From positions 10,788,001 through 10,852,000 of the forward strand of contig CM119375.1 of NCBI GenBank assembly GCA_051294905.1: 64,000 nucleotides of DNA, read 5' to 3'. The position numbers and the translations under genes are program-made. The DNA is from Botryllus schlosseri. Lineage: Eukaryota. The notes under the pieces were generated by a model that was given only the letters and a program-made list of their open reading frames with translations, ran no database searches and was not told where the DNA came from. Positions 3,105 through 40,083 of the stretch are shown in pieces; the first letter of the stretch is position 1; every line of letters starts with the position of its first letter.

Positions 3105-15604
<12,500 letters not shown>

Positions 15605-17307
15605 CGGACACCGCCACCCGGGAACGCAAGGATGGCCAGCCTGCCTGATTTTGTCACGGTCACCGGGCGTGTTGAACCCATTCGATCGCCTGTTGATAAT
15701 AAATAATATTTATGATCGTTTTTTATTTATACATTTCTTTGCTAATACACCGACGGCAATGCTCTCGAATGTCGCCCGAGCTGTCGAAGAATTGACATAA
15801 ACGTCCGATAGCAGACTTGGATACCTTGATAATCAGGCGAATTAGACGAAATTCCGGTGATCTAACTGTAGCCTAATTTGTGAAATGTTTTATGATGTAA
15901 TTTTAATTGATGGTATTCTTGAAAATTATACGGGAGAATTGTACTTGCACAGTGCGAAGCGCGCCAATCTTGGTGTGCAAACATTTGTAATTGGTGTGCT
16001 CACGAGGATGAGCTCTGATTTAAAATGAAATGAACGTGGTTTTTCTTGAAATTCCTTCCAAATCAGGCTTTTAATTTAATCTCCGGATTTTTGTGAATTC
16101 TCTAATTACAATTCTAATCAAACTGGGGTAAAACTGTTTAGCTATAATTTAACTCTATCTAATTTGGAAAAGCTGAAATTGTCTCTACTTGAGCTATAGT
16201 TCCAGTTGTATCGCGAATTCACGTTCTTTTCCGAATTCCCTTGCTCTTTCACGATTACAGCCAGATTTTTTATATTATTATATCGCGGTCCTTCTCGTAA
16301 CGACTCCCTGTCCGTCACTCGGAAGCATCGTGGGGAATTATTGAAGCCACGATGTCCATCGATGGTGAATGCGGAGTCGTATTTACCCCTCACCTGACGG
16401 ACATCACTCTGTGCGTTAAGATGAATCCTTCTTAACTATATCAATGAAAAATGTGCCATCTCAATTTTTTTACAATGCCATATATATTGATGTTGCCATA
16501 AGCTCTTACAATACCGCCCGCGTAATGATGCATTTCGCCAATCAGAATTATGGCCGTAGGCCTGATGATCATGATTCGTTTGACGCCCCCGCATTTAGTA
16601 TTTTGTTCTCTTTCTTTGCTCTGCGATTTATTTTTGCTAGATGAAGACAATTTTTATTTTCATTATACAACGGCATTTTCTTTGGGACATCTTCGTGATG
16701 ACGGTGGTTTCCGGGGACGTAGGTTACCTCGAACCACAAGGGTAACGCCGGGGTCTAGGGTAGTGAGGAGACACACACGTCTCTTTCGGTATCAAAATTG
16801 ATGGAGAAACGCATTCTTATTTGGCGTACCGCTTCGGTAGTTTAGTTTAGAGTGTTCCCGTGCGCAGAAGAGTTACATTACTGGGGACTGCTGCGATCAA
16901 ATCAAACCTTATTGAGACGAGAAAAAGCTGCAGTCACATTCTGCCATTCCGTGATTTCATACGTTGATGCGGAGATCGACATCGGACGATAAACATCTTG
17001 ACAGGAGATGAATATTTATTCTGCAATGAACTATCTAGTTTTTCATATCCTTTTCTCATGTCTGACAGAATCTATATGGTCCAACCTTAGTGGTATTGGT
17101 TTATCCCTATAGCTAATACTTGGTTGGCTATACAATATGCATTGCATAGAATTAGATACTTCCTGGCAGTTTTACGTTGGCTCGGCTTGTAGAAGGCCGT
17201 CTTCAATAGTCCAGTTGAAGAAATGCGTAATTAGATCACCATAACAAATTGCCCCGAATACGTGGAACAGTAGAAAATTACAGATTGGCAAGACGGGTTT
17301 TCGATCA

Positions 17308-17325
17308 TCACCGTAAAGGCTATAC
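17308..17325 (+). promoter_or_regulatory. PSE-like element of a type-3 Pol III promoter for the RNase P RNA gene
   Basis: TCACCGTAAAGGCTATAC at about -64 relative to the predicted RNA 5' end; resembles the metazoan snRNA PSE (TCACCNTNA...) at the usual distance. No clear TATA box. Confidence 0.55.
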
Positions 17326-17371
17326 TCGCCACGATTCCCACCTCATATTCCTCAGATAGACGGCGACTATC

Positions 17372-17585
17372 GGCGAGAAGCCCGCTTGTCGGTCGTGAAG
17401 CGACCGGGGGAAGGTCCGAGACAAATGCCGCCGTTGCGTCCGAAATGGGCGCTCGCTTAACGTGAGGGCGGCGCACCAGAAATACACCCCTCACCGGGTT
17501 GGGAGCGCCGCCGGCAGGCTTAAAATTAGTTCAATAAGCGGGGCTCATCGTAGATGGGTAACTCGATTCGGACTACTCTCTCGCC
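17372..17585 (+). ncRNA. RPPH1: Nuclear RNase P RNA (RPPH1/H1 homologue), compact, about 214 nt
   Basis: All five conserved regions occur in order: CR-I GGAAGGUCCGAGAC (17409-17422), CR-II AGAAA, CR-III UGGGA, CR-IV AGUUCAAU, CR-V AACUCGAUUCGGACUAC. Helices pair: P1 GGCGAGA/UCUCGCC, P2 CCCGCUUGU/AUAAGCGGG, P3 CGGUCG/CGACCG, P4 GUCCGAG/UUCGGAC, P7 UGCCG/CGGCA, P8, P9, P10/11 GGCGGCGC/GCGCCGCC, P19 GCUCAUC/GAUGGGU. Confidence 0.92.
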
Positions 17586-17589
17586 TTCG

Positions 17590-17594
17590 TTTTT
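17590..17594 (+). terminator. Pol III T5 terminator of the RNase P RNA gene
   Basis: TTTTT begins 5 nt after the 3' strand of P1. Confidence 0.7.
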
Positions 17595-17792
17595 CATAAA
17601 CATTTTCCTCCAAACATTTGACCGGGACCGCGGAGGTGACGGTCAATAGCAATCTTGTACATACATGTGACTACTAAAACAGTGTGGGCTAGAGTCCTCT
17701 CCATTTGCGTTGCTTTTATTCGTAATTTATTCTGTTTTAGATATCCATATCATAGCCAAAGTTGCACGGGAGCCTGGATGTGCAACTGAATT

Positions 17793-18060
17793 GCTACTCA
17801 AAAGGTTTGATGTTTTAAACATATAAGATATGAGGAAACTAGAAATTGCCAAGTTTATGTATCAGTTCCATTGCGGTCATGTCCCTCAAATTTCAACGAC
17901 TACTTCACCTCGGAGTCAGAAGGGCACAAGTACGGCACACGCGCGTCAACGAAGAAGAACTAGGCTACTATATGATCAGGACGGAATACAAGAAAACGCA
18001 TTGCGCTATCACAGTGGTTCCCAACCTTTTTACATCCACGTACCATTTCGAGGTTTTATC
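17793..18060 (+). mobile_element. Degenerate LINE (L2/CR1-like) RT C-terminal fragment
   Basis: Frameshifted translation VLNI*DMRKLEIAKFMYQFHCGHVPQ/NFNDYFT..HKYGTR..IRTEY..NALRY resembles the typical C-terminal tail of CR1/L2-clade ORF2. Confidence 0.7.
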
Positions 18061-21130: not shown

Positions 21131-24100
21131 TAGCTTCACATATTGCGTTAAATTTCGTTTTCTCATTCAACAGAGTAGTTTTGTCTTGCCTTGAAAATTC
21201 CACGCATGACGAAGTTTGGATAAAAGAAAAATTCCAAACACCGGTTTTTCGTCATTCTGAACAAACGTAAGTTTCTTACAACTTGACAATCTCTCACTAT
21301 CTCCAGAAGATGCATGATGATAATACCGCTAAAATATACTACTAAATCCGTACAACCATGCTCATAAAAATCCTGCGCGAGTCACTTTCCACCGCACACA
21401 TCCCGGGTTCTACCCAAGTCTTCTCATATCATGAAACAAGATATCCTCCTCTCCTCTTCGGCCGAAACAAGCACACGTTGTCGACTGCACGAATGATAGA
21501 GGCAGTGTATTTTCTATCGTGTTGTATACAAGTTGACATAGTCGGTGTTCCTAAAATTGGCGGCATTTTCAAGATATGGGGAATTTCTACTGTGCCTATG
21601 CCAGACGAAATGACTATCATTATTCGAAAATATCGCCTTTAACATGCCACGACGCGCGAACGGCAGCGAGTAAATGACAATATCCCGAAGAAAAAACCTC
21701 AAGACTTCATATTTACAGTTGACTGCGTCTCCTTGGACATTGAATAGGAGTTCTAGATATATCCTGTCCTTAGCACATACGGTAAGGACGAGGAGCCAAT
21801 CTAGATATTTTAGGAGCCGATAGAAACGCAATATAGTGTACCGTTTGTCCATCAAACAGGCCGACACTAATACGGAATAGGGCCGAACAAGTGTCTCGAA
21901 ATAGGGCACGCCAATGCAGTGTCGGCCAAATTCATTACACGCAATACACGCAGGGGGTCCATCGAATGTTAATGTGAAGCTTCCATTTTATTCCTATTCA
22001 TCATCGCTAACTTGCGCGCTACAGTGGTGTACGGAAAAGTAAGAAATAGAAAAGTTAAATCTGTGATAGCAACACGAAATATACAATTCATATTTGAATA
22101 AAGAATCAATTGTGCCACTGTAGAATTGTAAGAACGATGTCCCGCGCCAAAATACATAAAACATCATCTACTCGACACGGCATATGTATTGCATCCAACA
22201 CCAGAGCGAACGTGTCCCGTACGCTGCAATATACGACTCTTAAATTCAATGGTTACAGAAGAAGCAAAAATATATTGAGAGTGAATGTATCGTAAAAGTT
22301 GTAGTCGATCAGAGTCGTGTTGAATTCGACTTTCATCATAATTATCTTGTCAATGTTTCCGGTGCTGATTTGTCACCAATCAAATGTCACTAAGATGAGG
22401 TTGAACATGATCGAGAGATTGTAAGTTCAGGCGAGCTACATAAAGAATGTTCACAGTACATTTTATGGTCAGACGTTCAAGTTATGGACAGTTGGACATT
22501 GCATGATGTAAAAACACACCGACAGAAGCAGCAGTGATAGTGGCTGCCCCACAGGATCGAGAATCCACTTCCTTTTATTGAGACCTTCAGCCCAATTGTG
22601 TACATTGGCATGTTTAGTATATGGAGACCCGCAATTTTCAGGATGCAATTTGAAATTTGAAACATAAACTGCGCTACTCTTGAGATGCAATTCGAGTTTC
22701 GAAACATACATTGTGCTACAGAGTATTGCAATATTTTAAGGTTATTTGTGTTCGAGGATACCAGCACGGCATAATATGACAGAATATAACAATTCAACCC
22801 CTGCGATTCATACTAGGCAACGTTTTATATAGTATTACAAATAGCAATCATATGAAAACCGTGATATACGTATGACACAAAAAAGACGACCTCCTTACAA
22901 AACAAAGAGCGCAAAACGATGTCAAGGCGGAGAACGAAGGAAAAAACAAGTTGGCACGAAAATAAATTGAGGCCGACCCGATTTCGCCGTGCCGGTCGGA
23001 ACGGCAGTCGCAAAAATCCACGCTTCCAGTCGCCTCCTATGTAACAGGTCCGTAGCGAATCAGTTGAACAGCGGGAGATTGTAAAATCTGAAGCCGCGTT
23101 TTCCTTTTACCGCGCAATAAACGGCGATTAGATGGTACACTGGAAAGAAAGGGGATAATAGTCATGACACCGTAACTGGTTCTCTCAAGGTTTGATACAA
23201 AAATTTGAGCGTCTTTTTCAAGTTGAAACTACTTACAGCACAAATAAAACTAATTCCTTTTTACAATGCAAATTTTAAAATGTATAAAGTAGTCTTGAGA
23301 TGAGTTTGCGTCGTTTGTATAGGTAAGAGAATCACAAGAACAGTGTGAAATGGCGCCTGTATCACGACAGCTGAAGCATGCGACCCCTCCACCAAATCCA
23401 CATTTTGAAACTACTTGAGTACTTTTTCGACCATTCATTCTCTACTGGATGCAGTTTTGATATGTCTTAGATATCGCTAAGATTCTACTTGTTAATTGGG
23501 TGGAAAATTACAGCTCTACTTCTTGAGCACCTCTGAATATAATTTTAATAGGCTGCAAGACGCCGTGTAAAGTAAAATTTCAATTCAAGTTACTAAAACA
23601 TGTCTCATTTGATACCACACTATTCAGATTTACTATCATTGAAACAACAAGGTAAAAAGTGGAACCTGAAGAACTATCACTGATACTGAACAGAATTCAG
23701 ATCTCAGCTATGTGATGCCACGCAACAGATTTCGGTTATAGGACAGTTTATGTGCCTTCTTGTGCTTTTGGCTTTGAAGCTTTAACCATACCAGCCAGTA
23801 TAGTATGTCCTTGAGTCACTACAAGCTACCTATTAATGAAATGTATAAAAAGGAAATTAGTCATACATCAAGTATCACAGCCTCACTGACAGCGGCGTGT
23901 ATTGATACCGAACAGGACAGTGAGAGACAATGCGAAAAAGCTCCCGGATGTTGAAGGAAAAGAAATTTTACAGCCGACACAACGTCCCAGTTAAACGTAG
24001 TGCTGTGACAATGCATTGGAAAATATTTCCAAACAGATGATGCAGTCAAGGTTTGTCACAAAAAGCAGCTGTGAAAAGCCAAACGCCTATCAAGCAGCTT

Positions 24101-25501
24101 CCTTCCAGGAAACAAGCTGAGTTGGCAGATCATTACGAAAACAACGCACATGAGTGTAGCGTGCTCTCAGTCATAGCACGACCATATGGTTGCTTCAAAG
24201 GAAAAGGCTATTTTACACAGTAAAGCTAGTTAGTTTTCACCAAACCATGTCCGTTGCGATAAAATATTGGGAAAACAATGTAAAGGAACTCTTAGCATTT
24301 AGAGTGAAGGTGGTATTATATTAGCATTGCTATAGCGTTCTCAGGAGGAATTTGCATTAAGATGAGCACCAATTGTAGCTGTGATTCATCAAAACATTCG
24401 CACGGTTTGTCTGCAACAAGTATGCATACGTAACTAGGAAATGCTTAGACAGTGAGACATTACGACATTTACTATTGCTGCTTCTTTTAAAATAAATAAC
24501 GATTACGTAATGCAGATTACTATATGTCTTACTGAACCATACATACGTTAAGTCTTTTAGCAGATCACCAGGACATCAGCATATAGATTTTAGGAAAGTT
24601 ATTTTCATACCTTTAGTTAACATTACTCAATACTCATACATGTCACTAGCACAGTACAGAACAAAAATCAGTGTGGTAGGTAATTCTTCTTCTGAAATTA
24701 AGACAATGATTAGTAATACTCATAATTTTAGGTTACTCTGGCTCAAACATAAATTTGAATTACAACTACCTCTAGACATGATTACAGTTCAACCAAAACT
24801 GCACTCGACTTCAAGTCTCAAGTCAACCAAAAAGGTAGTTCTGAAGTAACTGAGTAACTCGGCATGCAAAAATTGGGTGACATTTGGTGTTATGGATATA
24901 GGCTACTATTTCTCATTGACAACAAAAAAAGGTGAAATTTCACTAAAGGTAACATACCAACAGGAAAAACACTATCCAATGTGTAACTGTGACAACCATA
25001 GAATTATTTGAGCCTTGGTTTGGCAGCTATAGCATTAGCAGGTTACAATTCACTAGTATTTTATAGATATTGAACTGTTTCCTTGTAACAAACACTTAAC
25101 AATAGCGGTAGTCATTTCAAATTTGTTTCTCCTTGTAAGGCATTGCTGCACACAATTGTACACAGGAAGACATCAACGATCGAGCCTGAATAGGTCTGGG
25201 TAGAATTCTTAGTATTTGAATCTATAGCTGGCAATATATTAGCATTAGGCAGCATAGCGAATAAGGTTGTATTCATCCAGACAGTATAGGACAAGTGGAT
25301 GTATATAATATTGCGAGATAATACAATGGAGATTATTCATACCAGGACCACCTGAATATGAATGGATTTTGCGTTTGGAGCTTCATGCTTGGAGTCATAA
25401 CAACTGGCTGTGTGAATAATTTTTGCATTACTTGTGCAGACCAAAAAAGTAACCGTCCTTTATATTCTTTGTGTATCGCAGAATTTCATTTGTATAACAC
25501 G

Positions 25502-28500
25502 ATGCCTGTGAGTGATCCGTTGTTGAAAAGTTTGAAATACTTAATTGAAGAGTTTTATTCAATTGATGAAGTTGTGACGGATGGAAGTCCTTATTTGGCG
25601 TCATTCTGTCAGACCGTCGAACATGCGATAACAAAAGGAATAAAACTAGGTAAGTATCAACAGTAAAGTGTGTTACTTTCGTTTTAACACCTGATGCAGC
25701 AGCGTCGCTTTGACAGTCCATGTTAGAAATAAAGTTACAAAGTTTTCAATCGAGATAATGTCATTGTCAATGTATTTCTAAAACACCATAGCAAATAGAA
25801 CAAATCAGTAGGGAGCATCCAGCCTGATTGGTAAGTGATCCATGGGCAATTGGGCATGCATACCCAACCGATACGTCAGTTGAGTAGAATAACGGGGCAA
25901 ATTTTCATGCACGGTAGTGAAACTGTATACTATCAGCAAGTACTTGTCCGTAAAGTAAACTCAAGCAAAATACACAATGACCAATCCTTCATGCAGAAAA
26001 AAATTCCGTTCTTATTGATCACTTTGTTGTAGTCAAGCTAAGTCAGGAAGTGAAGACAGTTACGCACGATTCTAATAGAATATTGTCCGGTTGGAACAAA
26101 CGTCTCCGATTCACCGCTGGGATTGAATTCTTATAGCAGAGCATGGCTGCCACTAACACCGTGTAAGGCATCAATCCGCATGAACTGATATAGACACGAG
26201 AACACTTGTTCGTTGACTCGCATAGATTCTAGCTGGGTTGAAGCTGACTTGTACCATGGCGTCAGCGTGGGTATTCGTTGAGTAACATCAGCGTTCAGTT
26301 CGGATCACAACAAAGAGATGAACTAGCCCCACCAAAAATATGTTGACCAATTTTGTATCACCAACATCTTTTTTCGCCAACTTTTAGATGACATTTGAGA
26401 TCCATAAACTTAAATACCTAGGTTAATGTCATTGAATAATTCTCTGAGCGTTTCACTACAATAATGGGAGCTTTTAGATATTGCTTTATTTCATCTGTGG
26501 ACCACATACCCTACGATGGTGAATTCAGCAGCAGTAGGTGCATTTACATGTAAAAGAAAATTATAATTTGCAATAGTACATTTGATACTAGCCACCTGTC
26601 GCCGATCAAAATACATTACTGCCGTCAACAAAACGGTTCATTGTTATATTATATTTCATCACCGGAAAATAATACGATACTCGTGAATTACATTATCACA
26701 TTATTCAAATTAGATTTGCGAATATCTCGAGCTTTGATGGTGCACAGTGCACACTTCCCAGCGCATTTTTACTAATAACTCGCTGGCTTTTAAGGATCTT
26801 GGGACCATTTCAAGTCGGATGGACAAAGTATAAGACGGAAACAATTTTGGACAATTCTCGAATATTTTCACGCCAGCCAAACGTTACCACTCGCTATTTC
26901 AACCGCTGTACGCGCTGCGCAGAATAATAAGAGGTAGACAATCCATTTAGGTACATAACTAAAGGCAAGGTTACCCGAGGGGCCACTTCGGGCAATGTAA
27001 TGTACCCAACTCTACGATGACAGCATGACAAATCTGTGTTGATAGTTGAAAATCAGTATCACATCTCGCACTCAGGGGTGTGCATTGCACTGTGCAACTT
27101 AGACTTACCCTCATAGAATAAAATCGTGAATCTCTTAAAGTGCTCATTTTGAATGGTGTGTGGCAGGCGACATGGTTTTCCAAATCACCTTATAGTATGG
27201 TACGTTTAAGTCAAGCTAAATTGTCCAAAAAAGGGACAAAATGCTATCATTACTAAGATATGGTTATGCTGACCTTGCACGAATATTTTTTTAGCCAAAA
27301 TTATTCAAGGACCTCAATACAATTTCTCGTAGTCTTAAATCGAATTTAATCGATCAATCTCGCTACCTCCATTACCAATTTTTAATGAAGTGATCGGCCC
27401 CGCAACAGCTAGAAAGCTTAAGTGCTGCTAGCGGGTGCACTGCATTATTTCTATCTGACCGTCCACACGTTATTGAAGATACAAAACTCCCAATCGAAAG
27501 CTGCCGTATTGTGATGGCATTATATGAGCAATGAATATTATGCGAATTTTCAGTCGGTGGGTATAATTGACATCTTTCCACAGCCTGAAACACAATGATG
27601 GGCGTCTGCGGTATTTCATTCGTCAATGTCTGATAAGAAGGACGTTACACGTGGTGGTCGAATTCCTCAGAACCCGCAAAGAGGAGCTTGAAAGCAGCTG
27701 GTACGACTCGAACGAAGGAAATCAGGAGCAACACAATGCAGCCACAATAATAACACATGAAGTTCTAGCCGAGCAATTAAGGTGAGTGGGCCTGCTGGTA
27801 GGCTATATAAAGTACTTCATGACCACATGGTAAGTTAAGTAAGTATAGTTCTTGCATTGTCCGAAAGTCGAGAAATGACATAAAGCGCTGTAGGCCAAAA
27901 TTGTAGAATCTCAAAAAGACGAGATATTCACGATATTGAACTGTGTTTTTTAGGTCCCTATTGCTGACCGTGTCTACCTCCATCACGTTTGAAATCAACT
28001 TGGAAAACTTTTACTTCCTCGACCACACGTGGAATATCCCGGATATGAGAACGGTGGAATTCGTGCCGACGCAATATCTCGGAATAGGGATGCTGTATAT
28101 TGACGGTAAGTCGAGACCACGGCAGTGTACAATTTCCGAAGCGAACTAAATTACCGCTCGACACAAATTATTGCATCATATATCGTTATCAACTACCCCT
28201 AATGCCGTCATTACTGCAATCGCCCATTTTAACACTGGGCGGGAGTGATTAAATCAAGTGGTTTCCAACCTTTTATGGTCACTAGGGCTCTTCAAAAATG
28301 ACTTTTTTTCTCAAATCGCACTGGCTACTTGATAAAATTGTTAGGTTACTTAATTTAAGCCTACACACAAAATTTGGTTCAATTCCAGCCAGTAACCGCG
28401 TTGCTACAGGAGAAGAAAGTTTCTATTTATTATATAAAAATAAACAATAAAAAATTTGAAAATTTTCTGTTCACCCCATGAAGGTGTTCGGTTGTCTATA

Positions 28501-30613
28501 GAAACGAACCTCGCCGAATTTGGTTCAATTTCAACCAGTGGAAGCGGAGTTATTGCCGTCGAAAAATTTTGATTTGAATAAAATAGTATTTACAGTGAGC
28601 ACAACTATAATAAATAAACCAAGATTCGGTCACCGTAAATACTATTTTATTCAAATCAAAATTTTTCGACGGCAATAACCCCGCTTCCACTGGTTGGAAT
28701 TGAACCAAATTTGGTGAGCATCGTTTCTATAGACAGCCTAACACTTTCATGGGGTGAACAGAAAATTTTCAAATTTTTTTTATTTATTTTTAAATAATAA
28801 ATAGAAACTTTCTTCTCCTGTAGCAAAGCGGTTACTGGCTGGAATTGAACCAAATTTTGTGTGTAGGCTTAAATTAGGTAACCTAACAATTTTATCAAGT
28901 AGCCAGAACGATTTGAGAAAAAAAGTCATTTTTGAAAGGCCCTAATGGTCACGTACCAATTCCCAATTTACAAATGTCAGGTCAGCACCATGGTCACAAG
29001 TCAATATCACTCTTACAGTTTTGATTTGAGTCAAGTCGAGTCATTTTCAAGTCACCACCGAGTCAAGTCCGAGTTCAAGTCAGCAAGCAGAGGATCGAGT
29101 CCGAGTCATGGTATAATGACTCGAGTCCGAGTCCACGTCATTGTGTTGACTGCTCAGTTTCCAATCAAATTCTTGTGAAACCCCCTTTTTATAACTCTGT
29201 TTGGTGATATCGAATGGTTCGCATTTCTTATAGAATAATTTTCCTCACTTTTGGCAGTTTCTGATCGCATTTTCCAGTACCAGTACCAACAGACAAAATC
29301 CCAACAGTATGGCTACGTTACTATTCTTCGAAATTACAATGAAATGTCAGAGTCTCAAGTCATGCGCAATGACTCGAGTTCAAGTTGAGTCAATACACAG
29401 ATTGACTCGAGTCATCAGAAAATCATGACTCGAGGTGAATCATGACTTGAGTCATTACAACCCTGGTCGGCACCCCCCCTCCCCCAGACCTACTTACGGC
29501 CTATTTTAGAAGCCGATTTCAGACTCGCAGGTAGAAAATTACTGGTATAGACAAAATGTTTTAGCGTTACTCCCTAAAAAGCAATATACTTACTGCTACA
29601 ACATTAACTTGATTGTACGACAGCTAGGACCACACATTCAGGGCCAGTAGTATGATCAAACTTTTGTGAAATCCTTGTGTACAAATTTGATTTCAGGATA
29701 CGGAATCATCACAAAACTACGAGCTGGAAGCGTAGCCGCAGACCAAAAAGATCTCGGAATAGGCGACCTTCTCGTGACGATGAACGAATACATGCTGTTC
29801 CCGGCAAAGAAATCCGGTGACAACGAAATCGTGTCGATATGGAAGAAATGCCGCAAGAAAGACAATCCGTGCAGGTTGACCGTGATAAAACCACGGTGCC
29901 CCGCAACGAGAGGAATATTTCCGCCGTTGAGAAGGGTGCTGTCCGAATATCAAGACGTAATGGACGAGTATTACAACACGCAAAAGGAGAGAATCGAAGA
30001 GAAACTGCGTGAGGCGGAGGAACGTAAAGCTACGTCTCTCGCGCCAGAAGCCAACAAAGCAGGAACGATGTCAGTGGCGGAGAGCAATTCGGGATGTGGC
30101 CGCCATTCGGTGACATACATCGGCAAGGTGTTTGTGGGAGAACAGGGCGGAATGGGCGAAATCGAACATGTAATCAAATCAGCTTTGGTGGAGCATTCCG
30201 CAAAAGCACCCGTAGAAGTAATATTGGAAATAACTGAAATCGGAGTGTTGATCAAAACTAAAGAGCCAACAGAGAGTAAACCGCTAAGGGCAGGAAAGAA
30301 AGATAACGTCCAAAGCCTGCTGGGAGCGTCGTTCGACTTACTAGCCGACGATGACATTGACAAAGTAACGCTTCCAGTGTACAGCGAAGAGGACGCCTCC
30401 GACATTGTTTTCAATCACAAATTCGCAGACATATCCAGCTGCGGAAAGATCGTACGAGACGAAAAGCACTTTTGCTACATCGCCGGCGACACTTTCTGCA
30501 CGATATCGAAGCAGTTCCACGGCTACGTGTTTACCGCGAGGTCGCTGGGTCAGGCGAAACTGATTTTGAATAGCATTTATCAGGGCTTCAAGAGGACAAC
30601 GTTTTTCATGTGA
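25502..30613 (+). CDS. RUN-PDZ-PTB(PID) domain adaptor protein
   Basis: Exons 25502-25649 (MPVSDPLLKSLK..FCQTVEHAITKGIK, RUN helix), 27584-27781 (DGRLRYFIRQCL, RUN core), 27954-28105 (FLDHTW..FVPTQYLGIG), 29697-30613 (PDZ GIITKLRAGSVA..GDLLVTMN; PTB VTYIGKV..DISSCGK..FCYIAG..GYVF). One small exon between 25649 and 27584 is required by phase but was not identified. Confidence 0.8.
28283..28944. mobile_element. Palindromic hAT MITE family A, copy 2
   Basis: Perfect TSD atggtcac; inserted in the left end of a Charlie-like remnant (aagtggtttccaacc). Confidence 0.92.
28978..29465. mobile_element. hAT-like remnant with GACTCGAGTC/CAAGTC subterminal repeats
   Basis: Repeated gagtcaagtc/gactcgagtc units; right terminus attacaaccctg; left end and TSD unclear. 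Related pieces near 46030-46100 and 50105-50200. Confidence 0.5.
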
Positions 30614-31438
30614 GCGTGCAGAGCACAGTGTTTTATCATGCCGCAAATTTGAATTCTATTAATACAAAACTCGCGAGAAAACTTTTCTACTGCCGACAAC
30701 TGTGCGATATTATCATGGCGGAAGTACGTTAATGAATTCTATTTCAAGAACAATCCATACATTAGATGTTTGCAAACAGAAAATTTAATGCACTTTCCAG
30801 TTTATTTTTATGGTCACGGACCACGGCAATGAATTTTGTACTTAATTCACCTTGCTTTTAAAGGATATGGTATTTCACATGTAGGGTGTAACGCTAGTTC
30901 ACAGTCGGGTGCCTGCATATATCTTTACGATGCAAGAAGCAAAGTCAGTTTCAGTTTCACACAGGATACCTCAGGCCATCGTTTAAAAATCCAAGCACAA
31001 TTCAAGGTATGGCCTTTACGATATAATGTCACGTGATGTGATGTCACCCAATATCTTAAACAAAAGATTACGCTAAGAATGGAAATCCATCCAGTATCAT
31101 CCCACAGCTGCGACTGGGTAACTTACGCGTTCTCAATAAAACGCATATGTTGAGGTGGAAAAATTGAGAACCACAGCATGAAACATTATTACTCCAAATC
31201 TATCTCTATAGAAGGCAGTATAAGGTCCAATGTCTCGCAAAACAGCGTTTAAGAAGCACTTATAGAAGACATCGGGCATCAAGATATGAATTCAAAAATG
31301 TACTCACCCCCAGGAATAAAACAGACTGCACCAACAACGAAGAAAATGTAAATAGCGCTCACTGAAAACAAAAGTGTTTCATCTCATAACTCTTTTAAAG
31401 GAACTGGCCTATACATGGACTTGGTAAAAGTAACCTAA

Positions 31439-31838
31439 GACTCTTTTTCTCAAATTGTAAAATTTGGATTTGAATAGAAAAGTAGTTACGGTGGGCAGAA
31501 ATATAATAAATAATTAAAGAATTGACCACCGTAAATACTATTTTGTTTAATTATAAATTTTTCGACAGCAATAACTCTGCTTCCACTGGTTAGAATTGAG
31601 TCAAATTCGGGGAACATCGTTTCTATATACAACCCAACACTTTGATGGGGTGAACAGAAAATTTTGAACATTTTTTTATTAATTTTTATAAGAAGTGGAA
31701 ACTTTCTTCTCCTGCAGCAATCCGGCCACTAGTTGGAATTAAACCAAATTTGGTGTGTAGGCTTAAATTAGGTAACCTAACAATTTTGTCAAGTAGCCAG
31801 TACAAATTGAGAAAAAAAGTCATTTTTGAACACCCCTA
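31439..31838. mobile_element. Family A MITE (TAGGGGTG subtype), left arm deleted
   Basis: Right arm and terminus gtcatttttgaacacccctA followed by atgaacag; left side jumps from gactctttttctcaaatt to the central palindrome. Confidence 0.85.
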
Positions 31839-34800
31839 ATGAACAGTTTTAAAATTGTCAGACTGGATATGACGAAGGAAAGCATATTGCGTCGCTTCAG
31901 GAATTCAAAGGGAGGTCGGGCTCCTATAAAGTCGTGATAGGTAAGTAACACGCAATGACCACCAACGTATATAAATTTTAGATGTCTGGCGAATTAAAGA
32001 AGGTAGGATGCATGTTGACGGCCTGTTGGAAAAGTAGCAATCATGCCTAGAGATGATGCGTATATTTTTACTCATGGATGTAATATTGGGATTCAGCAGT
32101 TAGGAAATCTGGGAGAACTTCGATTTTTAGAAAGAAAAAGTCTGAAATACCGTACCGTATTCATAAAACACCCCAGGCAGTTTTACAAAACCCTGGTGTA
32201 ACCCAGGGGTTTCCAACATTTTTATTACGCTGTCGCCCCCCTTTGAAAACTTTCAAAATTCAATAACCCACCTTTTTTCCAACTTTTTTTTCAAAACTCA
32301 ACCCTCTAACCCGTAGGGGCTACGGGCCCATAGGTTGGGAATATCAGTGAATATTGAAATTAAAATATCAGTCAACAAACAAGACAAAACGGACCTGTTT
32401 CAAGTGTGGGGAAGGGGTAATAAACTTTCAATTCGAAAAATGTCTGTCAGATTTTTAGAAAAATCACTTTCACCATTTCATTTGTTGTAGGATATGTGCA
32501 ATTGTGCATGTAATGATGGCGACACATCACATATGATCATTATGAACTGCTCATTACCAAGGGCTATCAGTTTAAATTCGACTTACATTCAACTTTAGTA
32601 GCTTCTAAGATGATACCGGTAATACAAAGGCCTGCAGAAAACAAATACAAAATGTTATTCACCATACATAACTTACCATGAAGCACGAGTGTGGCGAGAT
32701 TATCAACACCATTACAAAACCCAATGGAGAGTCATGTGGTGGCCCGGACAACCAGTACACTGCTATAGACCAGTGACTTTCAAAGAGCGGGGTACTTTTC
32801 ATACAGCAAGGATTGCCCAGCGACAAGAATCAGAGCACTGATATTCTGGGTGCTCAGAAAATTACTCTACCGATTCAATCCCACAAAAACACGTCATTCA
32901 TATAGACTACAATGGAAGCTTTGGTGTGACAGAATGGAAATACAATATAGTAGCCTACCAAGTTTTGTCAAAAGTGATTCGAACTTTATCTGCGCTACTA
33001 ATAAATCTATAAATTGCCACCTATGAAACAGTGTAGGCTACTATTTTCATCACAATAGATTGTCATGACGAAGCCACAAAAAAGGCATTCAATGCACTAT
33101 GACAGTATTTCGATCAAAGTTTACAACACAACCAGGTGATCGTACATATTTTAGTATATTGAATGTAATATCACAAAATTTAAAAGAGATTGTGGAAAAG
33201 AGATTATATTTCATATACTTGGATATTGGATTGTTATCCATGTGTCCCAAAGTAAGTCACTTCCAGCATAATAAATTTGTACGAAGAACTGGAGGTATGA
33301 AACCAGAATTACACCCTTCACTGACCAGCTACATGCTACTGGGTATTGATGTGTCAACAACAGGAGTCTGTGTTTCCCAATCATTATACGGGCAACATTT
33401 CAAACTAGGAAGAAAGATCACTCCACATAATCCAGTTAACCTAAATCACGACACCTGATAAGCAACATTGTGATAACACAGAGAGAAGTGTTCACAAAAA
33501 TTGAATATCACAACCGACCACAAAGAAGATAAGTTTGAGAGGCTTCTTGTCAATAATAGCCCTGAATAATAGAGTGAAATGGATACAGAAAACATATTTG
33601 CCTGTCTTAGCTTCAGATTGGGTGATATTCTGTCTCAGATGATGAAATTACGATAGATAGATACCATTGATATTTACAAGTATTACCAACTAATGAATTA
33701 CAGCAATTTAAAACATAATCTCCCAAATTCAAAGGTACCTATAATTATAATGGTAGAATTCATGCTATTTATCAAGGCCACAAAAAGTCCAATATACATA
33801 CTAGCATGCATATTAAAGATGAAAGATTTTACACGAAAACATGAGGTATATCTTACCTAATCCGATGAAAAATAATATAAAAGACATAACAACAACTTTC
33901 CAGTGCTCTCGAACTTTCGGATGTTGGTACCATCTAGAATGCATTTCAAGATTTCAGATGTTAACCACAAAAAGTGAAGTTCCACGTGGATAGGCAATGC
34001 AATAGGCCTACTGAATGAACATAAAATTTGTCGGTCATAGTTGAGGAACCCCAATTACTAGAAATTATCAAATATAACAAAAAATTACCTCAACATAGAT
34101 GGGGCTGAAGATGCGTTACTTGTATCTAAAGACCAATTGCTCCCAGAGTCCTTCATTCTAGAAAACAATACAATAGACATCGTTTATGAACAATGAAATA
34201 GAGTAATATCACATTAATATGGTGTGACACTGTGACAGCCATAGTACCACTGCTAGTGTCGCAGACCAGAGATTGCAGATTCAATTCCAGCTGGCTGCCC
34301 CCAAAACTGACAAGCATCAACACGTATCGATGCCAAGCCAAAGTGAAATAGACAGGGTTACGGCAGGAACGGCAGTCCATATAAAACTTCAGTCAAATCA
34401 TGATGTGGATCAGACATGTAGGCCTAGTGATTACTACATCAATGTATTCACTTAGAATTGAGATTACTTTGGTTATTAGAAATAAGCTGTGAATATGTAT
34501 AGTTAATGATAGTCGAGTGCTGATTGGAGGCATAATAGACCATTTTTACGATTTGTCATGAGTGAATTTCTATGTATAGACTTTGTTCATTATTCAAAAT
34601 CTTGAATGAGCAATTAGTAACAAGCAATGCACGTGATGGACATGCTATTATGTCATTGCACATACCATCTCGCAGTCTACACTACTGAACACTAGACAAC
34701 CCCCGTGACATGAAACAGAAAAGCAATTAAGTTTCTATTAATAGCTTCCATTATCAGTGTGCATGAAATTTCTAAACGTTAACCACAACAGACATATGTT

Positions 34801-35516
34801 ACGCTAGATGAGCGAAAATACCATGGGTCAGGCTCTATGGGCCTGAAGTATCACTATATATTACATACATGATCATTTCTGTAACACTAAAAGATCACAA
34901 GACAAATGCGTCTACTAAACACCTTCGCAAAGGAAACGCAATCGTTTTTCCAGTCCTGACGAGAGCACAAAAATTTCAATCATAGATGGATCCTGACGTT
35001 AAATAGGATCACACCAATCTGCACATTTAGGCTACACTTCTCCAATGAGTTAATCACTCAGTCAAAAGTGTGAAGTAGTTGTTAGATCAAACAGGGCCGT
35101 CAGATATTTTTAGATGTTAAAAATCATGGATCAAGTGTGTGAGTGCTAACATGTAATCGTGTCAAATCAACTTTTCCACTCAAAATGAACAGTCAGCAAT
35201 ACCATATTTTTTTAAATTAAATAATAATAATCCTACGAAATTTGATGTAAGCCTAGTGTTAAGATAAACTTTTGCAAATTATTGTTGGCTTATTCACCAA
35301 ACAACAATGTCATAACATGTGATTCAACTCACTGTATTCTGACGTTACCAACGTGATTTTCTTCATTGTCTTCGTTCTGTGAATAAGTAGAGCACGGTAT
35401 GGGAGCAATCCATTAGGAATGAAAAATATAACTTCTGACGTCAGAAAATTTCAGAAATAGGGGGAACGTATAAATTAGAAGTCTATAGCCTACATTATTA
35501 CTCACCACCAGGCCTA

Positions 35517-36764
35517 CCGTAACACGGGGTGACTTTGTACCACTTTTCACGCTCAATGCTAAATTATTTTATGATATGTCATGATGTTCTGCCTTTTGCT
35601 ATTCTGTTATATGCGGATGGGCTACAGCTATGGAGTAAGCATGAAAAAAAATATTGTTTTCTAGTTTTTGATCATTTTTTCAAAATTTTTCTGTGGTGGT
35701 CAAAGTTAGGCCTACCCATCGATGGGGTGACTTCAGCCGAGCACCATTTTTTGCAATACTACGACAGAGGAGTCATACATGCCAATCAGACAAGCTGAGA
35801 TGTTGAATTTGGTCCCCTATGGTCTTTTAAAAACAAAATATCAATCCAGTAGTGACACACTGCTACACTATGAAGCTGGTTGGTTAGAAGGTGGAAATAT
35901 TCCTGGGTATCATCGGTTGTCCCATCTGCAAGTAATTATTGTACACAACCTTTGTGTTAATGACTCAATGCTTATCAGAAATTCCTTGACCCAGTTTGAT
36001 ATGAACAGTTTTGATTGAATTTTTCAACTGTCATAGTAGTCATGTCATGTAATCGATTAGGTTTTGTGACAATATTTGTAAGAAATCACTCGTTAGCAAT
36101 AGAAAGCCCAAAATTTGTTCACGCTACGCAGTGGTCAGCTTATTTCATCCCCAAATCTAGTGATGAAGCAGGCTAGCATTATGGTGACTTCAGATGCTTC
36201 ACAGGTTGTAGCCGATCTTATGAGCAGTCTAAACAGCCCGTGGCATCAAGTTTTATTTTATATTTCCTTGGCTTTCTTCCTTACTTTTGATGATACTGAT
36301 ACTACGACTAATCTAAAAATACTCATGTTAGCTGACTGTAAATAGATGGTCAAAGTCACCCCAGAAATTTTTCAAAAATGAAAAAATTTATCAGCCGAAG
36401 TATTTTGTGTATTTTGAAAAAATGAACTATAATTTCGAACAGGAAAACCAATAAATGCTGTCACGTGCACAGCCTTTGTCGGCAAATGAAAGGAAACCGC
36501 CTCAAATGCTTTCTTTGTATGAACACCCAACAAAAGTTACAGCATATAAAATTTGGGATGGAATTTTTTACCTCACCTGTCACTATACAAAGGTGTTCCA
36601 GTCAGTTAAAATGTTGCCATTAAAGCATTCTTTTGATGCAGACCATCATAAACAACAGCTCAAAATATTCGTATAGTGATATCTTGCTCGATGTCGGCAA
36701 TAGAAACGAATATTGGTTTTTGGTCAAAGTCACCAGACAGTTTCAAAGTCACCCCGTGTTACAT
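35517..36764. mobile_element. TA-targeting (pogo/Tigger-like) non-autonomous element, 1.25 kb
   Basis: TIR CCGTAACACGGGGTGACTTTG / CAAAGTCACCCCGTGTTAC, TA flanks, internal repeats of the GGTGACTT motif (35724, 36183, 36352, 36725). Confidence 0.8.
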
Positions 36765-37123
36765 TAACTACAAAAAAAAATACCGTAACAATTTTCCTTG
36801 ATTTTGTGATGAAAATCAGGGGACATAGTGCTTGAACATCACTATTTGGATAGTTTTATGCATATTTCAGAACATAGTTTGGATTTCGATATGAAATGAA
36901 CCCGGAGCTCAGCCCCTTGCAAAACAGGAAACAACATAAAACAAAGCGGAAAGATAAACCAACGCTTACCCAAACGATGATGTCATCTTTTTGTGGCATT
37001 TTACCCCATTAGTTTAAAAGGCACGGACAAAAAGCAACCGGACAAAAGGCAAGAACCGCATTCTCCATTCAGGGGACAGTAATATTTAATATACAATTAA
37101 ATAGTATATTCATATTGAAATGA

Positions 37124-37157
37124 ACCCGAATATTTTCGGCTGACACTCGTCAGGGGT
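37124..37157 (-). ncRNA. Minimal type-I hammerhead ribozyme (- strand copy, identical sequence)
   Basis: Exact reverse complement of 37187-37220. Confidence 0.75.
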
Positions 37158-37186
37158 AATCATCAGCAACTAGTAGAGTGACGATT

Positions 37187-37220
37187 ACCCCTGACGAGTG
37201 TCAGCCGAAAATATTCGGGT
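37187..37220 (+). ncRNA. Minimal type-I hammerhead ribozyme (+ strand copy)
   Basis: ACCC-CUGACGA-G(UGUCAGC)C-GAAA-AUAUU-C-GGGU: conserved core CUGANGA and GAAA, stem I ACCC/GGGU, one-pair stem II, palindromic stem III AAUAUU, UUC cleavage triplet (cut predicted after 37216). Confidence 0.75.
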
Positions 37221-38417
37221 TCATTTCAATATGAATATACTATTTAATTGTATATTGAAGTTCTGTACCTCCAAGAAGCTCTTCAAGTAATATTTAACAA
37301 CATTGGTGATGCAAACAGTAATAAAGGTCAATGGATCTACATGTATTGACATTTGGTATACGAGCTATTCATTATTTATAAAAAGTTTTGATAAATTGAA
37401 GGCTTGCACTGGTAGCGGTTTTTATTTATTGACCCAGCAAAAGCAAAAGTAGAGTTCACCGATATGATCGGTCTGCAGGAAACAGCTATCAAGAGATCAC
37501 TTATCTTCTATTATCAGTGGAGCGAATCTCTTTGCTTATTTGTTATATATGTTAAATGTATTATCCTCAGATATCAAGTCATCAAAGACTATTGCACAGC
37601 TATGAAATTGCCTACAACATATCCAACTGATAAATACTCTAATACCTGTCGCTCAGTACTTGGGGGTAAGAACAACAGTACAGCCCAGTAACATACATAA
37701 AGCATTGTTTGCAAATAGAGATTTTACACCTGGAATTGTGGTGCTGAACTGTATGAAAACTATCAGGCCATGGCACAGTGTCTTAGTAACACAAAATATG
37801 ATTTTTCGAAAGACATATTTTCAAAATTAAATTCAGAATGCGATATTGATATATATAACATCATTTTGACATTTAAGAATGTTTATTACGGCATATGGAT
37901 ATTATATGCTCATATTATGCTTAACACTGAGCAGTCTATGAATAAGTTCACCATACTAGGCTATGACAATCATCCCATGGTTTGCAAATCAAAATTGTAT
38001 TTCACTCTCATGACAAAGACTCGCTGACCTAAATTATTTACTTGGAAAACAAATATCCCCAATAGCTCACTGAAGCATGGAACTATGACTCACTATGGAG
38101 ACTATGGTGATTCACTAGTGTTATGGAATTTGTTCATAGTTTTTCTGAACTGCACTTAGAATTATTAAGAAAGTTGACAAATACATGACTTTACTACCAG
38201 TTGAATCGATGGTCTTAATTAGCCTCACTATCAAGGCATCATAATATGATTTTTAGATGCGATTGACAGTATTTGCTTCTTCAAATACAGCAAAGAATCA
38301 GCAATTTTGATTCACACCATACAGATTCAAAAACAAAGTTCTATCAACACATCTTGAGTAGTTTCACTGTATGTATGCATGACATGTATATACCGCTAAC
38401 TTGAATAAACTTTTTCA

Positions 38418-38655
38418 GAGATAGCGTAGTGGTGAGCGTCGGCGCCATCCAAGCAGGCTGCCTGGGTTCGATTCTTGCTGTTTGAGGATATTCTGGGCTC
38501 CTCGTCCCCCCCGAGTCGCTGTCGATGAAGACTGTGACATCGGGGACTAGGTCGAGGTGGATACCCCCTATCTATTCTGTATATCACATTGTACAATGTA
38601 CATTGTGTGTGTGTCTTAGGCAGAAAGAAATATAATCTGACGAATGATTGATTGA
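38418..38655 (+). mobile_element. tRNA-derived SINE, family 1
   Basis: A box TAGCGTAGTGG, B box GGTTCGATTC (38465-38474), no acceptor stem, ATTG-repeat tail near 38645. The 3' boundary is approximate. Confidence 0.65.
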
Positions 38656-38814
38656 TTAATTCCAAAAATTGTTCATGCTTACAAAACCAGCACCGACGGC
38701 TACTAGAATTGACCCGCACTTCAGTCCATCAGTTGAAAAATAAATACTTTTTCGGTCAACAAATTTTAAAAGGTCCCTCCATATGTCTACACGAGTCTTG
38801 TAGAAAGGAAAGGA

Positions 38815-39128
38815 CGTAGTTTATTTTTGTCCTTGATGTTTTTTGCGGCATATACACCGACTCATGATACACATACACACGATCTGCGCATATGCATACC
38901 ATGAGTGCATGATGGGCATATGCCGCTGGACAAGGAAGTGCAGATATAGCCTTTACGGGTTTCCAAGCCATGCACCACCCCTTCATGCTATCCCAGTAAT
39001 GCATGAGCGCCAAGCAGGGATGTCATGGATACCAGTGTTACTAATCAGATCTTTGGTCTGACCCGACCGGGGATCGAACCCACGACCCACCGATCAAGAA
39101 GCCGGACGCTTCACCATTACGCTATCTT
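38815..39128 (-). mobile_element. tRNA-derived SINE, family 2 (full length)
   Basis: Reverse strand AGATAGCGTAATGGTG (A box) ... GGTTCGATCC (B box); body repeated at 15077-15290; A-rich tail. Confidence 0.8.
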
Positions 39129-40083
39129 ACTCACTTTGAACTTTGAGTAGCTCTCTGACTTTTTATGTTGCGTCAGAGACGCAGCAATGTCTGTAGGCAG
39201 TGTGAGTTTATCCACCAGTTTGCTTCCTCTCAGAGGTGTGCTTTCTCCATTGGTCGGACCGACTGGGGTTATTGGTACCGTATCTGTAAAATCATGTTAT
39301 TAAATGCGGTAATTGAAACTATTACAAGTTAGAAATCGCGTCCACAGATTGTTCAATCGAGCCAAGTCTCTCGGAAACGGTCTCCAATATAATAATGACA
39401 ACTATTTATCTTGTTACAGTTGTGGATCAGAAGGCCTGTTGATAGTTTTAAAGATACAGTAATTTAAAAATTAGGAAAATGCTAGAAGGGTAAATTGGCA
39501 ATGACGACAGGTCTAGTTTAGAACTTCAGAAATATCACTGAATAATTGCGAAGTCACAAGTCCAGTAGCCTAGACCACTAAGCCTAACTACCCTGTCAAT
39601 ATCAATTGAGTTTATTTTGTTAACATAACAAATACAGAAATAATGAAACAAGGAATGACGAAAAACTGGCAAATGGGATGAAGTGAAGGGATGAAAAATA
39701 ATCAAGTCTACTGCAGCCCATTCATAAGAGAAAAACAAGTTATGGTTGCATTATTGTGTACATATAATCTAATCTATTGATAAACCATATAAGTTGAGAT
39801 AAATAAAACTAAGAATACATGACACCAATGAGCAGTATTTCATAAGTTCACAATAGAGAATTAGCAAAAAAAAATATACAATACACGGATGATTTATATT
39901 TTATAATATACCGCCATACCGGTATTATATAAATAGAATAATAGGATGAAGAGACAAGTCTACTACTTCTATCCATCCCAGAACTGGGTCAAGCTTTGAT
40001 GTTCATGGCCGCAAGACAGATTCTGTAATTTTGACATTTTGATCACTTGAAAGCAAGAGATATATGATTTAATTGATTTAAGG

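What the first reader, a model, noticed from the sequence alone, without database searches (positions are those of the whole stretch)
17308..17594. Very compact nuclear RNase P RNA gene with stripped P3 and P12 domains
Seen: a GC-rich island of about 214 nt folds into a full eukaryotic RNase P RNA (CR-I to CR-V, P1-P4, P7-P11, P19), with a PSE-like element at -64 and a T5 terminator. P3 is only a 6-bp hairpin with no internal loop, and P12 is about 4 bp. Known: human H1 RNA is about 340 nt, and the P3 internal loop is the docking site for Rpp20/Rpp25 (Pop7/Pop6). Insects and crustaceans embed this RNA in Pol II introns, whereas this copy looks like a stand-alone Pol III unit. Inference: this lineage may run a minimised RNase P with altered or lost Rpp20/Rpp25 dependence. 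The gene has no ORF and is easily missed by annotation.
Basis: partly seen in the sequence, partly recalled or inferred. Interest (0 to 1): 0.82.

Follow-up and report, generated by a model that had tools for sequence, protein, structure and literature searches.

The report
Compact sea-squirt RNase P RNA gene
This is a genuine, apparently working gene for the RNA core of nuclear RNase P (the enzyme that trims tRNA precursors) in a sea squirt; it is about 80 bases shorter than in other animals because two protein-docking arms are cut down to stubs.

Summary
Rfam's nuclear RNase P model (RF00009) matches window 17372-17585 (+) end to end: 117.5 bits against a cut-off of 28, E 4e-33, 214 nt. It is the only Rfam hit in the window. 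All conserved regions and helices P1, P4, P7-P11 and P19 are present. P3 is a plain 7-8 bp hairpin with no internal loop, and P12 is 4 bp.

An alignment with eight environmental animal-type RNase P RNAs (286-306 nt) shows exactly two clean deletions, in distal P3 and in P12. The retained helices are kept by compensatory changes. Didemnum vexillum, another tunicate, has a 286-nt RNA with full-size P3 and P12, so the reduction is lineage-specific.

The gene is intergenic. It has a PSE-like box at -64, a TATA-like box at -28 and a T5 terminator, which is the normal deuterostome Pol III layout. A gene-only contig in a small run, probably RNA, suggests a discrete transcript. A related species carries the same compact form, and its differences all fall outside helices.

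The proteins themselves are probably kept, because RNase MRP shares them. The whole genome could not be searched for a second copy. I rate it a new variant of a known kind, of moderate interest.

The parts
17308..17327 (+). PSE-like proximal sequence element (starts TCACCGTAAAGG), at -64 to about -45 from the RNA start
   Evidence: Sequence read. Environmental animal RNase P genes carry a CACC-type motif at about the same distance. Only one change (17320) separates the related species across 17293-17364. The likeness to the human H1/U6 PSE is from memory.
17343..17350 (+). TATA-like box (TCATATTC), about -29 to -22
   Evidence: PMC4287351 places the TATA box 21-27 nt upstream of Pol III RNase P RNA genes in non-insect animals. 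It is a weak match to TATA.
17372..17585 (+). Nuclear RNase P RNA, 214 nt
   Evidence: RF00009, 117.5 bits, E 4e-33, full-length model match. The MFE fold reproduces the helices. Compensatory pairs against comparators. A gene-only contig 17367-17550 in run X7.
17389..17407 (+). P3 reduced to a 7-8 bp hairpin with a UGAAG-type loop; no internal loop and no distal stem
   Evidence: Comparators and D. vexillum have about 35-45 nt here in a helix-loop-helix.
17410..17422 (+). CR-I and the 5' strand of P4 (GAAGGUCCGAGAC)
   Evidence: Invariant columns in alignment A1, except for the C at 17417, which co-varies with G 17570.
17475..17505 (+). CR-II (ACCAGAAAU), the 4-bp P12 stub (17486-17489 / 17496-17499) and CR-III (UUGGGAG)
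   Evidence: About 70 nt of P12 present in the comparators is absent here.
17566..17578 (+). CR-V and the 3' strand of P4 (AUUCGGACUACUC)
17590..17594 (+). T5 run, a Pol III terminator 4 nt after the end of P1
   Evidence: Comparators have T4-T6 runs at the same place.

Best explanation
Window 17372-17585 (+) is most likely the functional gene for the RNA subunit of nuclear RNase P of a stolidobranch-like ascidian (tunicate). It appears to be transcribed by RNA polymerase III from an external type-3 promoter (PSE at -64, TATA-like box at -28) and to terminate at a T5 run, giving an RNA of about 215-222 nt.

The RNA keeps the whole catalytic core: P1, P2, the P4 pseudoknot, and CR-I, CR-IV and CR-V. 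It also keeps the module that reads the tRNA elbow: P7 to P10/11 with CR-II and CR-III. It has lost the distal half and internal loop of P3 and nearly all of P12.

In human and yeast enzymes those two elements dock Rpp20/Rpp25 (Pop7/Pop6, together with Pop1) and Rpp38 (Pop3). I therefore infer that this enzyme assembles without those RNA contacts. The proteins would either be held by protein-protein contacts or be absent from the P particle, while still serving RNase MRP.

Shown here: gene identity, anatomy, selection on the structure, intergenic position, and that the reduction is not shared by all tunicates. Inferred: Pol III transcription, catalytic activity, and the consequences for the protein subunits.
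For: - Identity: a full-length RF00009 match at 117.5 bits, E 4e-33, the only Rfam hit in 64 kb.
- Anatomy: alignment A1 with eight RF00009-positive environmental genes of 286-306 nt shows conserved blocks throughout and only two large gaps, at distal P3 and at P12.
- Selection on structure: helices are maintained by changes on both sides relative to the comparators. Examples are P4 C17417-G17570 against U-A, P7 U-A against G-C, and several pairs in P8 and P19.
- Related species: organism B carries the same compact gene with 4 substitutions and 1 insertion in 214 nt. All of these lie in unpaired linkers. The flanks have 21 substitutions in 399 nt plus indels of 1, 4 and 29 nt. A second sample of organism A has G17449A, which turns a U-G pair into U-A.
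- Transcript: run X7 holds a 184-nt contig confined to 17367-17550 at depth 8, with nothing on the flanks.
- Stand-alone unit: poly(A)-type RNA-seq runs show no reads over 17100-17720. The gene lies between a DYRK2-like kinase gene, whose recognised exons end near 13.3 kb, and the 3' end of a TMEM230/134 gene at 23.06 kb.
- Promoter and terminator: their layout matches that of the comparators and of deuterostomes in PMC4287351.
- Plausibility: yeast RNase P reconstituted without Pop6/Pop7 still cleaves at the correct site, though weakly (PMC6061874). Yeast Pop3 works without a kink-turn in P12 (PMC10966300).
Against: - The rest of the genome could not be searched, so a longer canonical copy elsewhere is not excluded.
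- The library type of run X7 is not on record, so the transcript evidence is indirect. Its contig starts 5 nt upstream of the modelled 5' end and stops 35 nt before the 3' end.
- The TATA-like box is a poor match to TATA.
- No activity or protein-binding data exist.
- Covariation against the comparators could not be scored in P1, P9 and P10/11, because the MAFFT alignment is out of register there.
Confidence: 0.85

Rival explanations
1. It is a truncated extra copy or pseudogene, and the working RNase P RNA is a canonical gene of about 300 nt elsewhere in the genome.
For: The genome beyond the 64-kb window could not be searched. Mammalian genomes do carry RNase P RNA pseudocopies; degenerate Canis and Rattus rows appear in the alignment printed.
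Against: - The two deletions are exact removals of helix tips, re-closed as stable hairpins, with every conserved region intact.
- Pairs are kept by compensatory change.
- The gene has its own upstream PSE and TATA-like boxes and a terminator, which retrocopies lack.
- It evolves more slowly than its flanks, and only in unpaired positions.
- A gene-only contig is present in run X7.
- No other contig of organism B or of X7 mapped to the gene at 85% likeness or more.
- No other RNase P note exists for this genome in the scan.
Confidence: 0.08
2. It is a functional RNase P RNA but is not an independent Pol III gene. It would be cut out of a longer Pol II transcript, as in insects and crustaceans.
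For: The TATA-like box is weak. The X7 contig begins 5 nt upstream of the modelled 5' end. The DYRK2-like gene lies upstream on the same strand.
Against: - No reads from two poly(A)-type RNA-seq runs fall on 17100-17720.
- The PSE-like, TATA-like and T5 elements sit at the canonical distances.
- PMC4287351 reports the intronic arrangement only in insects and crustaceans, and independent Pol III genes in deuterostomes.
- The upstream zone 17293-17364 is nearly invariant between species A and B.
Confidence: 0.05
3. It is the RNase MRP RNA, or a dual P/MRP RNA, rather than RNase P RNA.
For: P and MRP RNAs share P1-P4 and belong to one Rfam clan (CL00002). The P8 loop here reads GAAAU, which loosely recalls the GARAR loop of MRP RNAs (Woodhams 2007), whereas the comparators have UAGCA.
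Against: - Within the clan, Rfam keeps RF00009 as the best model, at 117.5 bits over the full length.
- CR-II (ACCAGAAAU), CR-III (UUGGGAG) and the P7-P10/11 junction are present and align column by column with P RNAs. These define P RNAs and are absent from MRP RNAs.
Confidence: 0.01

Closest known systems
Human H1 RNA (RPPH1) and other animal nuclear RNase P RNAs (Rfam RF00009)
   Same: Same family. CR-I to CR-V, the P4 pseudoknot, P7-P10/11 and P19 are present, with an external type-3 Pol III promoter layout and a T-run terminator.
   Different: 214 nt against a 301-position consensus and 286-306 nt in the eight comparators. P3 lacks its internal loop and distal stem. P12 is 4 bp and cannot form the kink-turn that human Rpp38 recognises (PMC10966300). 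P4 carries a C-G pair where the others have U-A.
Didemnum vexillum RNase P RNA (PMC5006418, supplementary files)
   Same: Another tunicate. A single RF00009 gene with the same conserved blocks.
   Different: 286 nt, with a P3 helix-loop-helix of about 38 nt and a long P12. This shows that the reduction seen here arose within the tunicates and is not a phylum-wide trait.
Microsporidian and Giardia RNase P RNAs
   Same: A very small P3 and a reduced specificity domain (Rosenblad et al. 2006, PMC1636426).
   Different: Those organisms also lack Rpp20 and Rpp25 and have generally reduced genomes. This is a chordate, whose relatives keep Rpp25-like and Rpp38 proteins. This RNA still has full CR-II and CR-III and a P19.
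Archaeal type T (Pyrobaculum) minimal RNase P RNA
   Same: A naturally minimised RNase P RNA of about 200 nt (cited in PMC10966300).
   Different: Type T lost most of the specificity domain. Here the specificity-domain core is intact and only peripheral protein-docking helices are trimmed.

Membership tests
Nuclear RNase P RNA (RF00009) | Covariance-model score above the curated gathering score over the whole model | tested here: met
   117.5 bits against 28, model positions 1-301, E 4e-33.
Nuclear RNase P RNA (RF00009) | P4 long-range helix flanked by CR-I and CR-V | tested here: met
   17413-17419 pairs with 17568-17574. CR-I and CR-V columns are invariant in A1. The C-G at 17417/17570 co-varies against U-A in 8 comparators.
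Nuclear RNase P RNA (RF00009) | Specificity-domain core: P7-P8-P9-P10/11 junction with CR-II and CR-III | tested here: met
   All four helices are fully paired. ACCAGAAAU and UUGGGAG align with the comparators.
Nuclear RNase P RNA (RF00009) | Eukaryote-type P3 helix-internal loop-helix (Pop6/Pop7 or Rpp20/Rpp25 site) | tested here: not met
   Only a continuous 7-8 bp hairpin is present, with 8 nt where the model has 34. This is a usual feature, not one that decides membership: Microsporidia and Giardia P RNAs also have a tiny P3.
Nuclear RNase P RNA (RF00009) | Extended P12, with a kink-turn in many animals | tested here: not met
   A 4-bp stem with a 6-nt loop. P12 length is known to vary, and not all P RNAs have a kink-turn (PMC1636426).
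Nuclear RNase P RNA (RF00009) | Expressed as a discrete stable RNA | tested here: inconclusive
   A gene-only contig 17367-17550 at depth 8 in run X7, whose library type is unknown. Poly(A)-type runs are empty, as expected for such an RNA.
Nuclear RNase P RNA (RF00009) | Pre-tRNA 5' leader cleavage by the RNP | not testable with these tools
   Needs biochemistry.
Type-3 Pol III gene (U6/H1-like) | PSE near -65 to -45, TATA near -30, T-run terminator, no dependence on internal boxes | tested here: inconclusive
   Motifs are present at the right distances and resemble those of the comparators. The TATA match is weak and no transcription data are available.
RNase MRP RNA (RF00030) | Lacks CR-II/CR-III and the P10/11-P12 arrangement of P RNA; GARAR loop in P8 | tested here: not met
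   CR-II and CR-III are present. Rfam's clan competition keeps RF00009. The P8 loop GAAAU fits only four of the five GARAR positions.

The most novel reading that the evidence does not exclude
This would be a chordate whose only nuclear RNase P RNA has shed both the Rpp20/Rpp25-Pop1 docking loop (P3) and the Rpp38 kink-turn arm (P12). It may be the smallest animal RNase P RNA. These subunits would then be partitioned to RNase MRP alone, or be held in RNase P purely by protein-protein contacts. That would make it a natural experiment on what these 'essential' peripheral modules do.
Probability: 0.35. Interest if true: 0.6.

Novelty: new variant of a known kind. Interest (0 to 1): 0.45.

Why it matters
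P3 with its internal loop is treated as a hallmark of eukaryotic RNase P and MRP RNAs. It is the platform for Pop6/Pop7 (Rpp25/Rpp20) and Pop1, and human Rpp38 reads a kink-turn in P12.

An animal that keeps the proteins, as its relatives do, while its P RNA lacks both sites would allow a direct test. One could ask whether these subunits are needed for tRNA processing or mainly for RNase MRP and other RNPs.

The finding also shows how far the RNA can be trimmed in a normal-sized chordate genome, as distinct from the reduced genomes of parasites. Practically, it gives a 214-nt natural minimal scaffold for reconstitution and structural work.

Tried and rejected
- **Metagenome scans.** A scan of JGI metagenome contigs for compact relatives, with CR-I to CR-V spacing of 115-145 nt, found nothing. 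The same anchors at normal spacing found 8 genes. With so few, this says only that the compact form is not common there.
- **Other collections.** The compact pattern in prokaryote genome contigs and viral contigs also found nothing, as expected.
- **Synteny to Styela clava.** I fetched 10 kb on each side of the Styela DPCD gene and of the RUN-domain gene, plus three other ascidian-like contigs. None contains an RF00009 hit. Neighbouring protein genes are syntenic, so the Styela RNase P RNA gene lies elsewhere or further away.
- **DYRK2-like neighbour.** Searching its last exon to reach relatives' contigs returned nothing. Pfam on the flanking ORFs gave nothing.
- **Literature.** Piccinelli et al. 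2005 (PMC1183490) and Marquez et al. 2005, the papers most likely to show Ciona P RNA structures, are not held. The RF00009 alignment in the Didemnum supplement has no Ciona row. Whether Ciona shares the reduction is therefore unknown.
- **MFE alternative for P7.** The fold pairs 17430-17432 with 17513-17515. I rejected this pairing because organism B changes 17430 and 17431 without compensation.
- **Unused tools.** I did not use the protein-representative search or the structure-prediction tools, because the feature is an RNA.

Full report
**What is there.** Rfam cmscan of the whole window gives a single hit at gathering threshold: RF00009, nuclear RNase P RNA, at 17372-17585 on the + strand. 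It scores 117.5 bits against a cut-off of 28 (E 4.1e-33) and covers model positions 1-301 without truncation. The RNA is 214 nt. Its G+C is 0.61, against 0.42 in the flanks. The printed alignment shows 8 nt where the model has 34 in P3, and 3 nt where it has 59 in P12.

**Fold.** An unconstrained MFE fold (-91.9 kcal/mol, z = -2.5) recovers P1, P3, P4, P8, P9, P10/11, P12 and P19. Coordinates are given under the observation check. P3 is a continuous 7-8 bp hairpin (17389-17396 / 17400-17407) capped by a 3-5 nt loop. P12 is ACCC/GGGU with a 6-nt loop.

**Organism.** The single-exon DPCD gene at 43352-43954 is most similar to ascidian proteins: Styela clava 67%, Ciona 58-60%, Phallusia 58%, Clavelina 55%. 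A RUN-domain gene gives the same order. Gene order around it matches Styela clava chromosome OZ123512.1: TMEM230/134 hosts the RUN gene, and DPCD lies next to DYNC2LI1 with nested NAD-binding genes.

**How unusual the size is.**
- A pattern made of the CR-I and CR-V anchors at normal spacing pulled eight genes from metagenome contigs. All are full-length RF00009 hits of 286-306 nt at 130-173 bits.
- The same anchors at the compact spacing found nothing in metagenome, prokaryote-genome or viral contigs.
- A MAFFT alignment of the window RNA with the eight (A1) shows conserved blocks all along and just two large gaps in the window sequence. One is about 30 columns in distal P3 and the other about 70 columns in P12.
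- The sixteen metazoan rows printed from the Rfam-based alignment in the Didemnum vexillum paper span 268-394 nt, going by their coordinates.
- Didemnum's own RNase P RNA is 286 nt, with a P3 helix-loop-helix of about 38 nt and a long P12 (PMC5006418 supplement). The reduction is therefore not a general tunicate trait.

**Evidence that it is a working gene.**
- Compared with the eight comparators, every pair in P4, P7, P8, P19 and proximal P3 is a standard pair in the window RNA, several through changes on both sides. Examples are C17417-G17570 against U-A in P4, U17426-A17516 against G-C in P7, and three pairs in P19. P1, P9 and P10/11 could not be scored because the alignment is out of register there, although each is perfectly paired within the window RNA.
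- Mapped contigs show that a related species label, organism B, has the same compact gene on a 1077-nt contig. It has four substitutions and one inserted base in 214 nt. All lie in unpaired linkers: 17430, 17431, 17435, after 17484, and 17520.
- The 399 nt of flanks carry 21 substitutions plus indels of 1, 4 and 29 nt.
- A second sample of organism A (X7) has T17435C and G17449A. The latter converts a U-G pair of P8 into U-A.
- Five of the six variant sites are unpaired and the sixth (17449) preserves its pair. About half the bases are paired, so five unpaired out of five is about a 3% chance outcome. That is a modest but consistent sign of purifying selection.

**Transcript.** Run X7 (226 million letters, library type not on record) contains a 184-nt contig confined to 17367-17550 at depth 8, with nothing on either flank. 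A DNA run of that size would not give a gene-shaped island, so this is most simply a transcript. It remains indirect evidence. Two cDNA RNA-seq runs show no reads over 17100-17720 in the 6-13% of each run that was read. This fits a non-polyadenylated Pol III product that lies outside any well-expressed Pol II transcript.

**Context.** Upstream on the + strand lies a DYRK2-like kinase gene, with recognisable exons from about 5.9 to 13.3 kb. Downstream, the first conserved exon is the 3' exon of a minus-strand TMEM230/134 gene at 23063-23161. A high-copy repeat starts near 17750. The RNase P gene is therefore intergenic.

**Promoter and terminator.**
- TCACCGTAAAGG starts at 17308 (-64), CATATT lies at -28 to -23, and T5 at 17590-17594 follows P1 by four bases.
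- The eight comparators show the same plan: a CACC-containing motif near -65, TATA near -30, and T4-T6 shortly after P1.
- Manivannan et al. (PMC4287351) describe exactly this layout (PSE, TATA 21-27 nt upstream, poly-T of 4-5) for deuterostomes and other non-insect animals. The stand-alone Pol III arrangement is thus ordinary.
- The zone 17293-17364 differs at only one base between organisms A and B.

**Mechanism.** The catalytic domain and the tRNA-elbow-reading module are intact, so the RNA should support normal pre-tRNA 5' cleavage inside an RNP. What is missing are two protein platforms.
- Rpp20 and Rpp25 footprint on P2/P3 of human H1 RNA (PMC3141246).
- Pop6/Pop7 bind the P3 internal loop and cooperate with Pop1 (papers listed).
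- Human Rpp38 recognises a kink-turn in P12, whereas yeast Pop3 works without one, through Rpr2/Rpp21 (PMC10966300).
- In yeast reconstitution, leaving out Pop6/Pop7 keeps the cleavage site but lowers activity and stability (PMC6061874).

A P RNA without the P3 loop is therefore viable in principle. It most likely relies on Pop1, Pop5-Rpp30, and Rpp29-Rpp21 contacts.

**Precedent and what stays open.** Rosenblad et al. link a very small P3 to the absence of Rpp20/Rpp25 in Microsporidia and Giardia. They also report an Rpp25-like protein and Rpp38 in Ciona (PMC1636426). These proteins also serve RNase MRP, so I expect the genes to be kept. What may have changed is their place in RNase P. That is inference only; nothing here tests it.

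**Limits.**
- Only 64 kb of the genome is visible, so a second copy cannot be excluded.
- The papers most likely to show Ciona P RNA structures were not available.
- The attempt to fetch the Styela orthologue by synteny failed, so the phylogenetic breadth of the reduction is known only as 'species A and B yes, Didemnum no'.

**Verdict.** This is a real and almost certainly functional RNase P RNA gene, and a clear member of RF00009. It is an unusually trimmed variant for an animal. The promoter arrangement is ordinary, and the proposed change in protein dependence is reasonable but untested. Interest is moderate.

Noticed in passing
window 17750-17850: A high-copy repeat begins about 165 nt downstream of the RNase P gene. 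Summed contig depth jumps from under 10 to several hundred in runs of organisms A and B, with many divergent copies and loose ends at 17816-17817.
   Followed up: no
window 23063-39296 (-) and 25322-30610 (+): A RUN-domain gene on the + strand (exons at 25322-25663, 26794-26934, 27567-27782, 27940-28146 and 29651-30610) is nested inside a minus-strand TMEM230/134 gene (exons at 23063-23161, 31282-31383, 33816-33953 and 39120-39296). The same nesting is annotated in Styela clava (L005).
   Followed up: partly
window 5903-13303 (+): A DYRK2-like kinase gene is spread over at least five exons. Recognisable motifs are [19 protein letters not shown] and [11 protein letters not shown], with a C-terminal ...[13 protein letters not shown]. 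It ends about 4 kb upstream of the RNase P gene on the same strand.
   Followed up: partly
window 43352-43954 (+); L001: A single-exon DPCD gene (200 aa) lies next to DYNC2LI1 (minus strand, from about 45.7 kb), which has BLVRB-like NAD-binding genes nested in an intron. This order is conserved in Styela clava. There, however, DPCD and the RUN gene are about 97 kb apart, against 13 kb here.
   Followed up: partly
window 17442-17446: The P8 loop of this RNase P RNA reads GAAAU, whereas all eight comparators have UAGCA. It loosely resembles the GARAR loop typical of RNase MRP RNA.
   Followed up: no
window 17361-17376: A short direct repeat CGGCGA...CGGCGA straddles the predicted RNA start. The X7 contig starts between the two copies, at 17367, so the true 5' end may lie a few bases upstream of 17372.
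   Followed up: no
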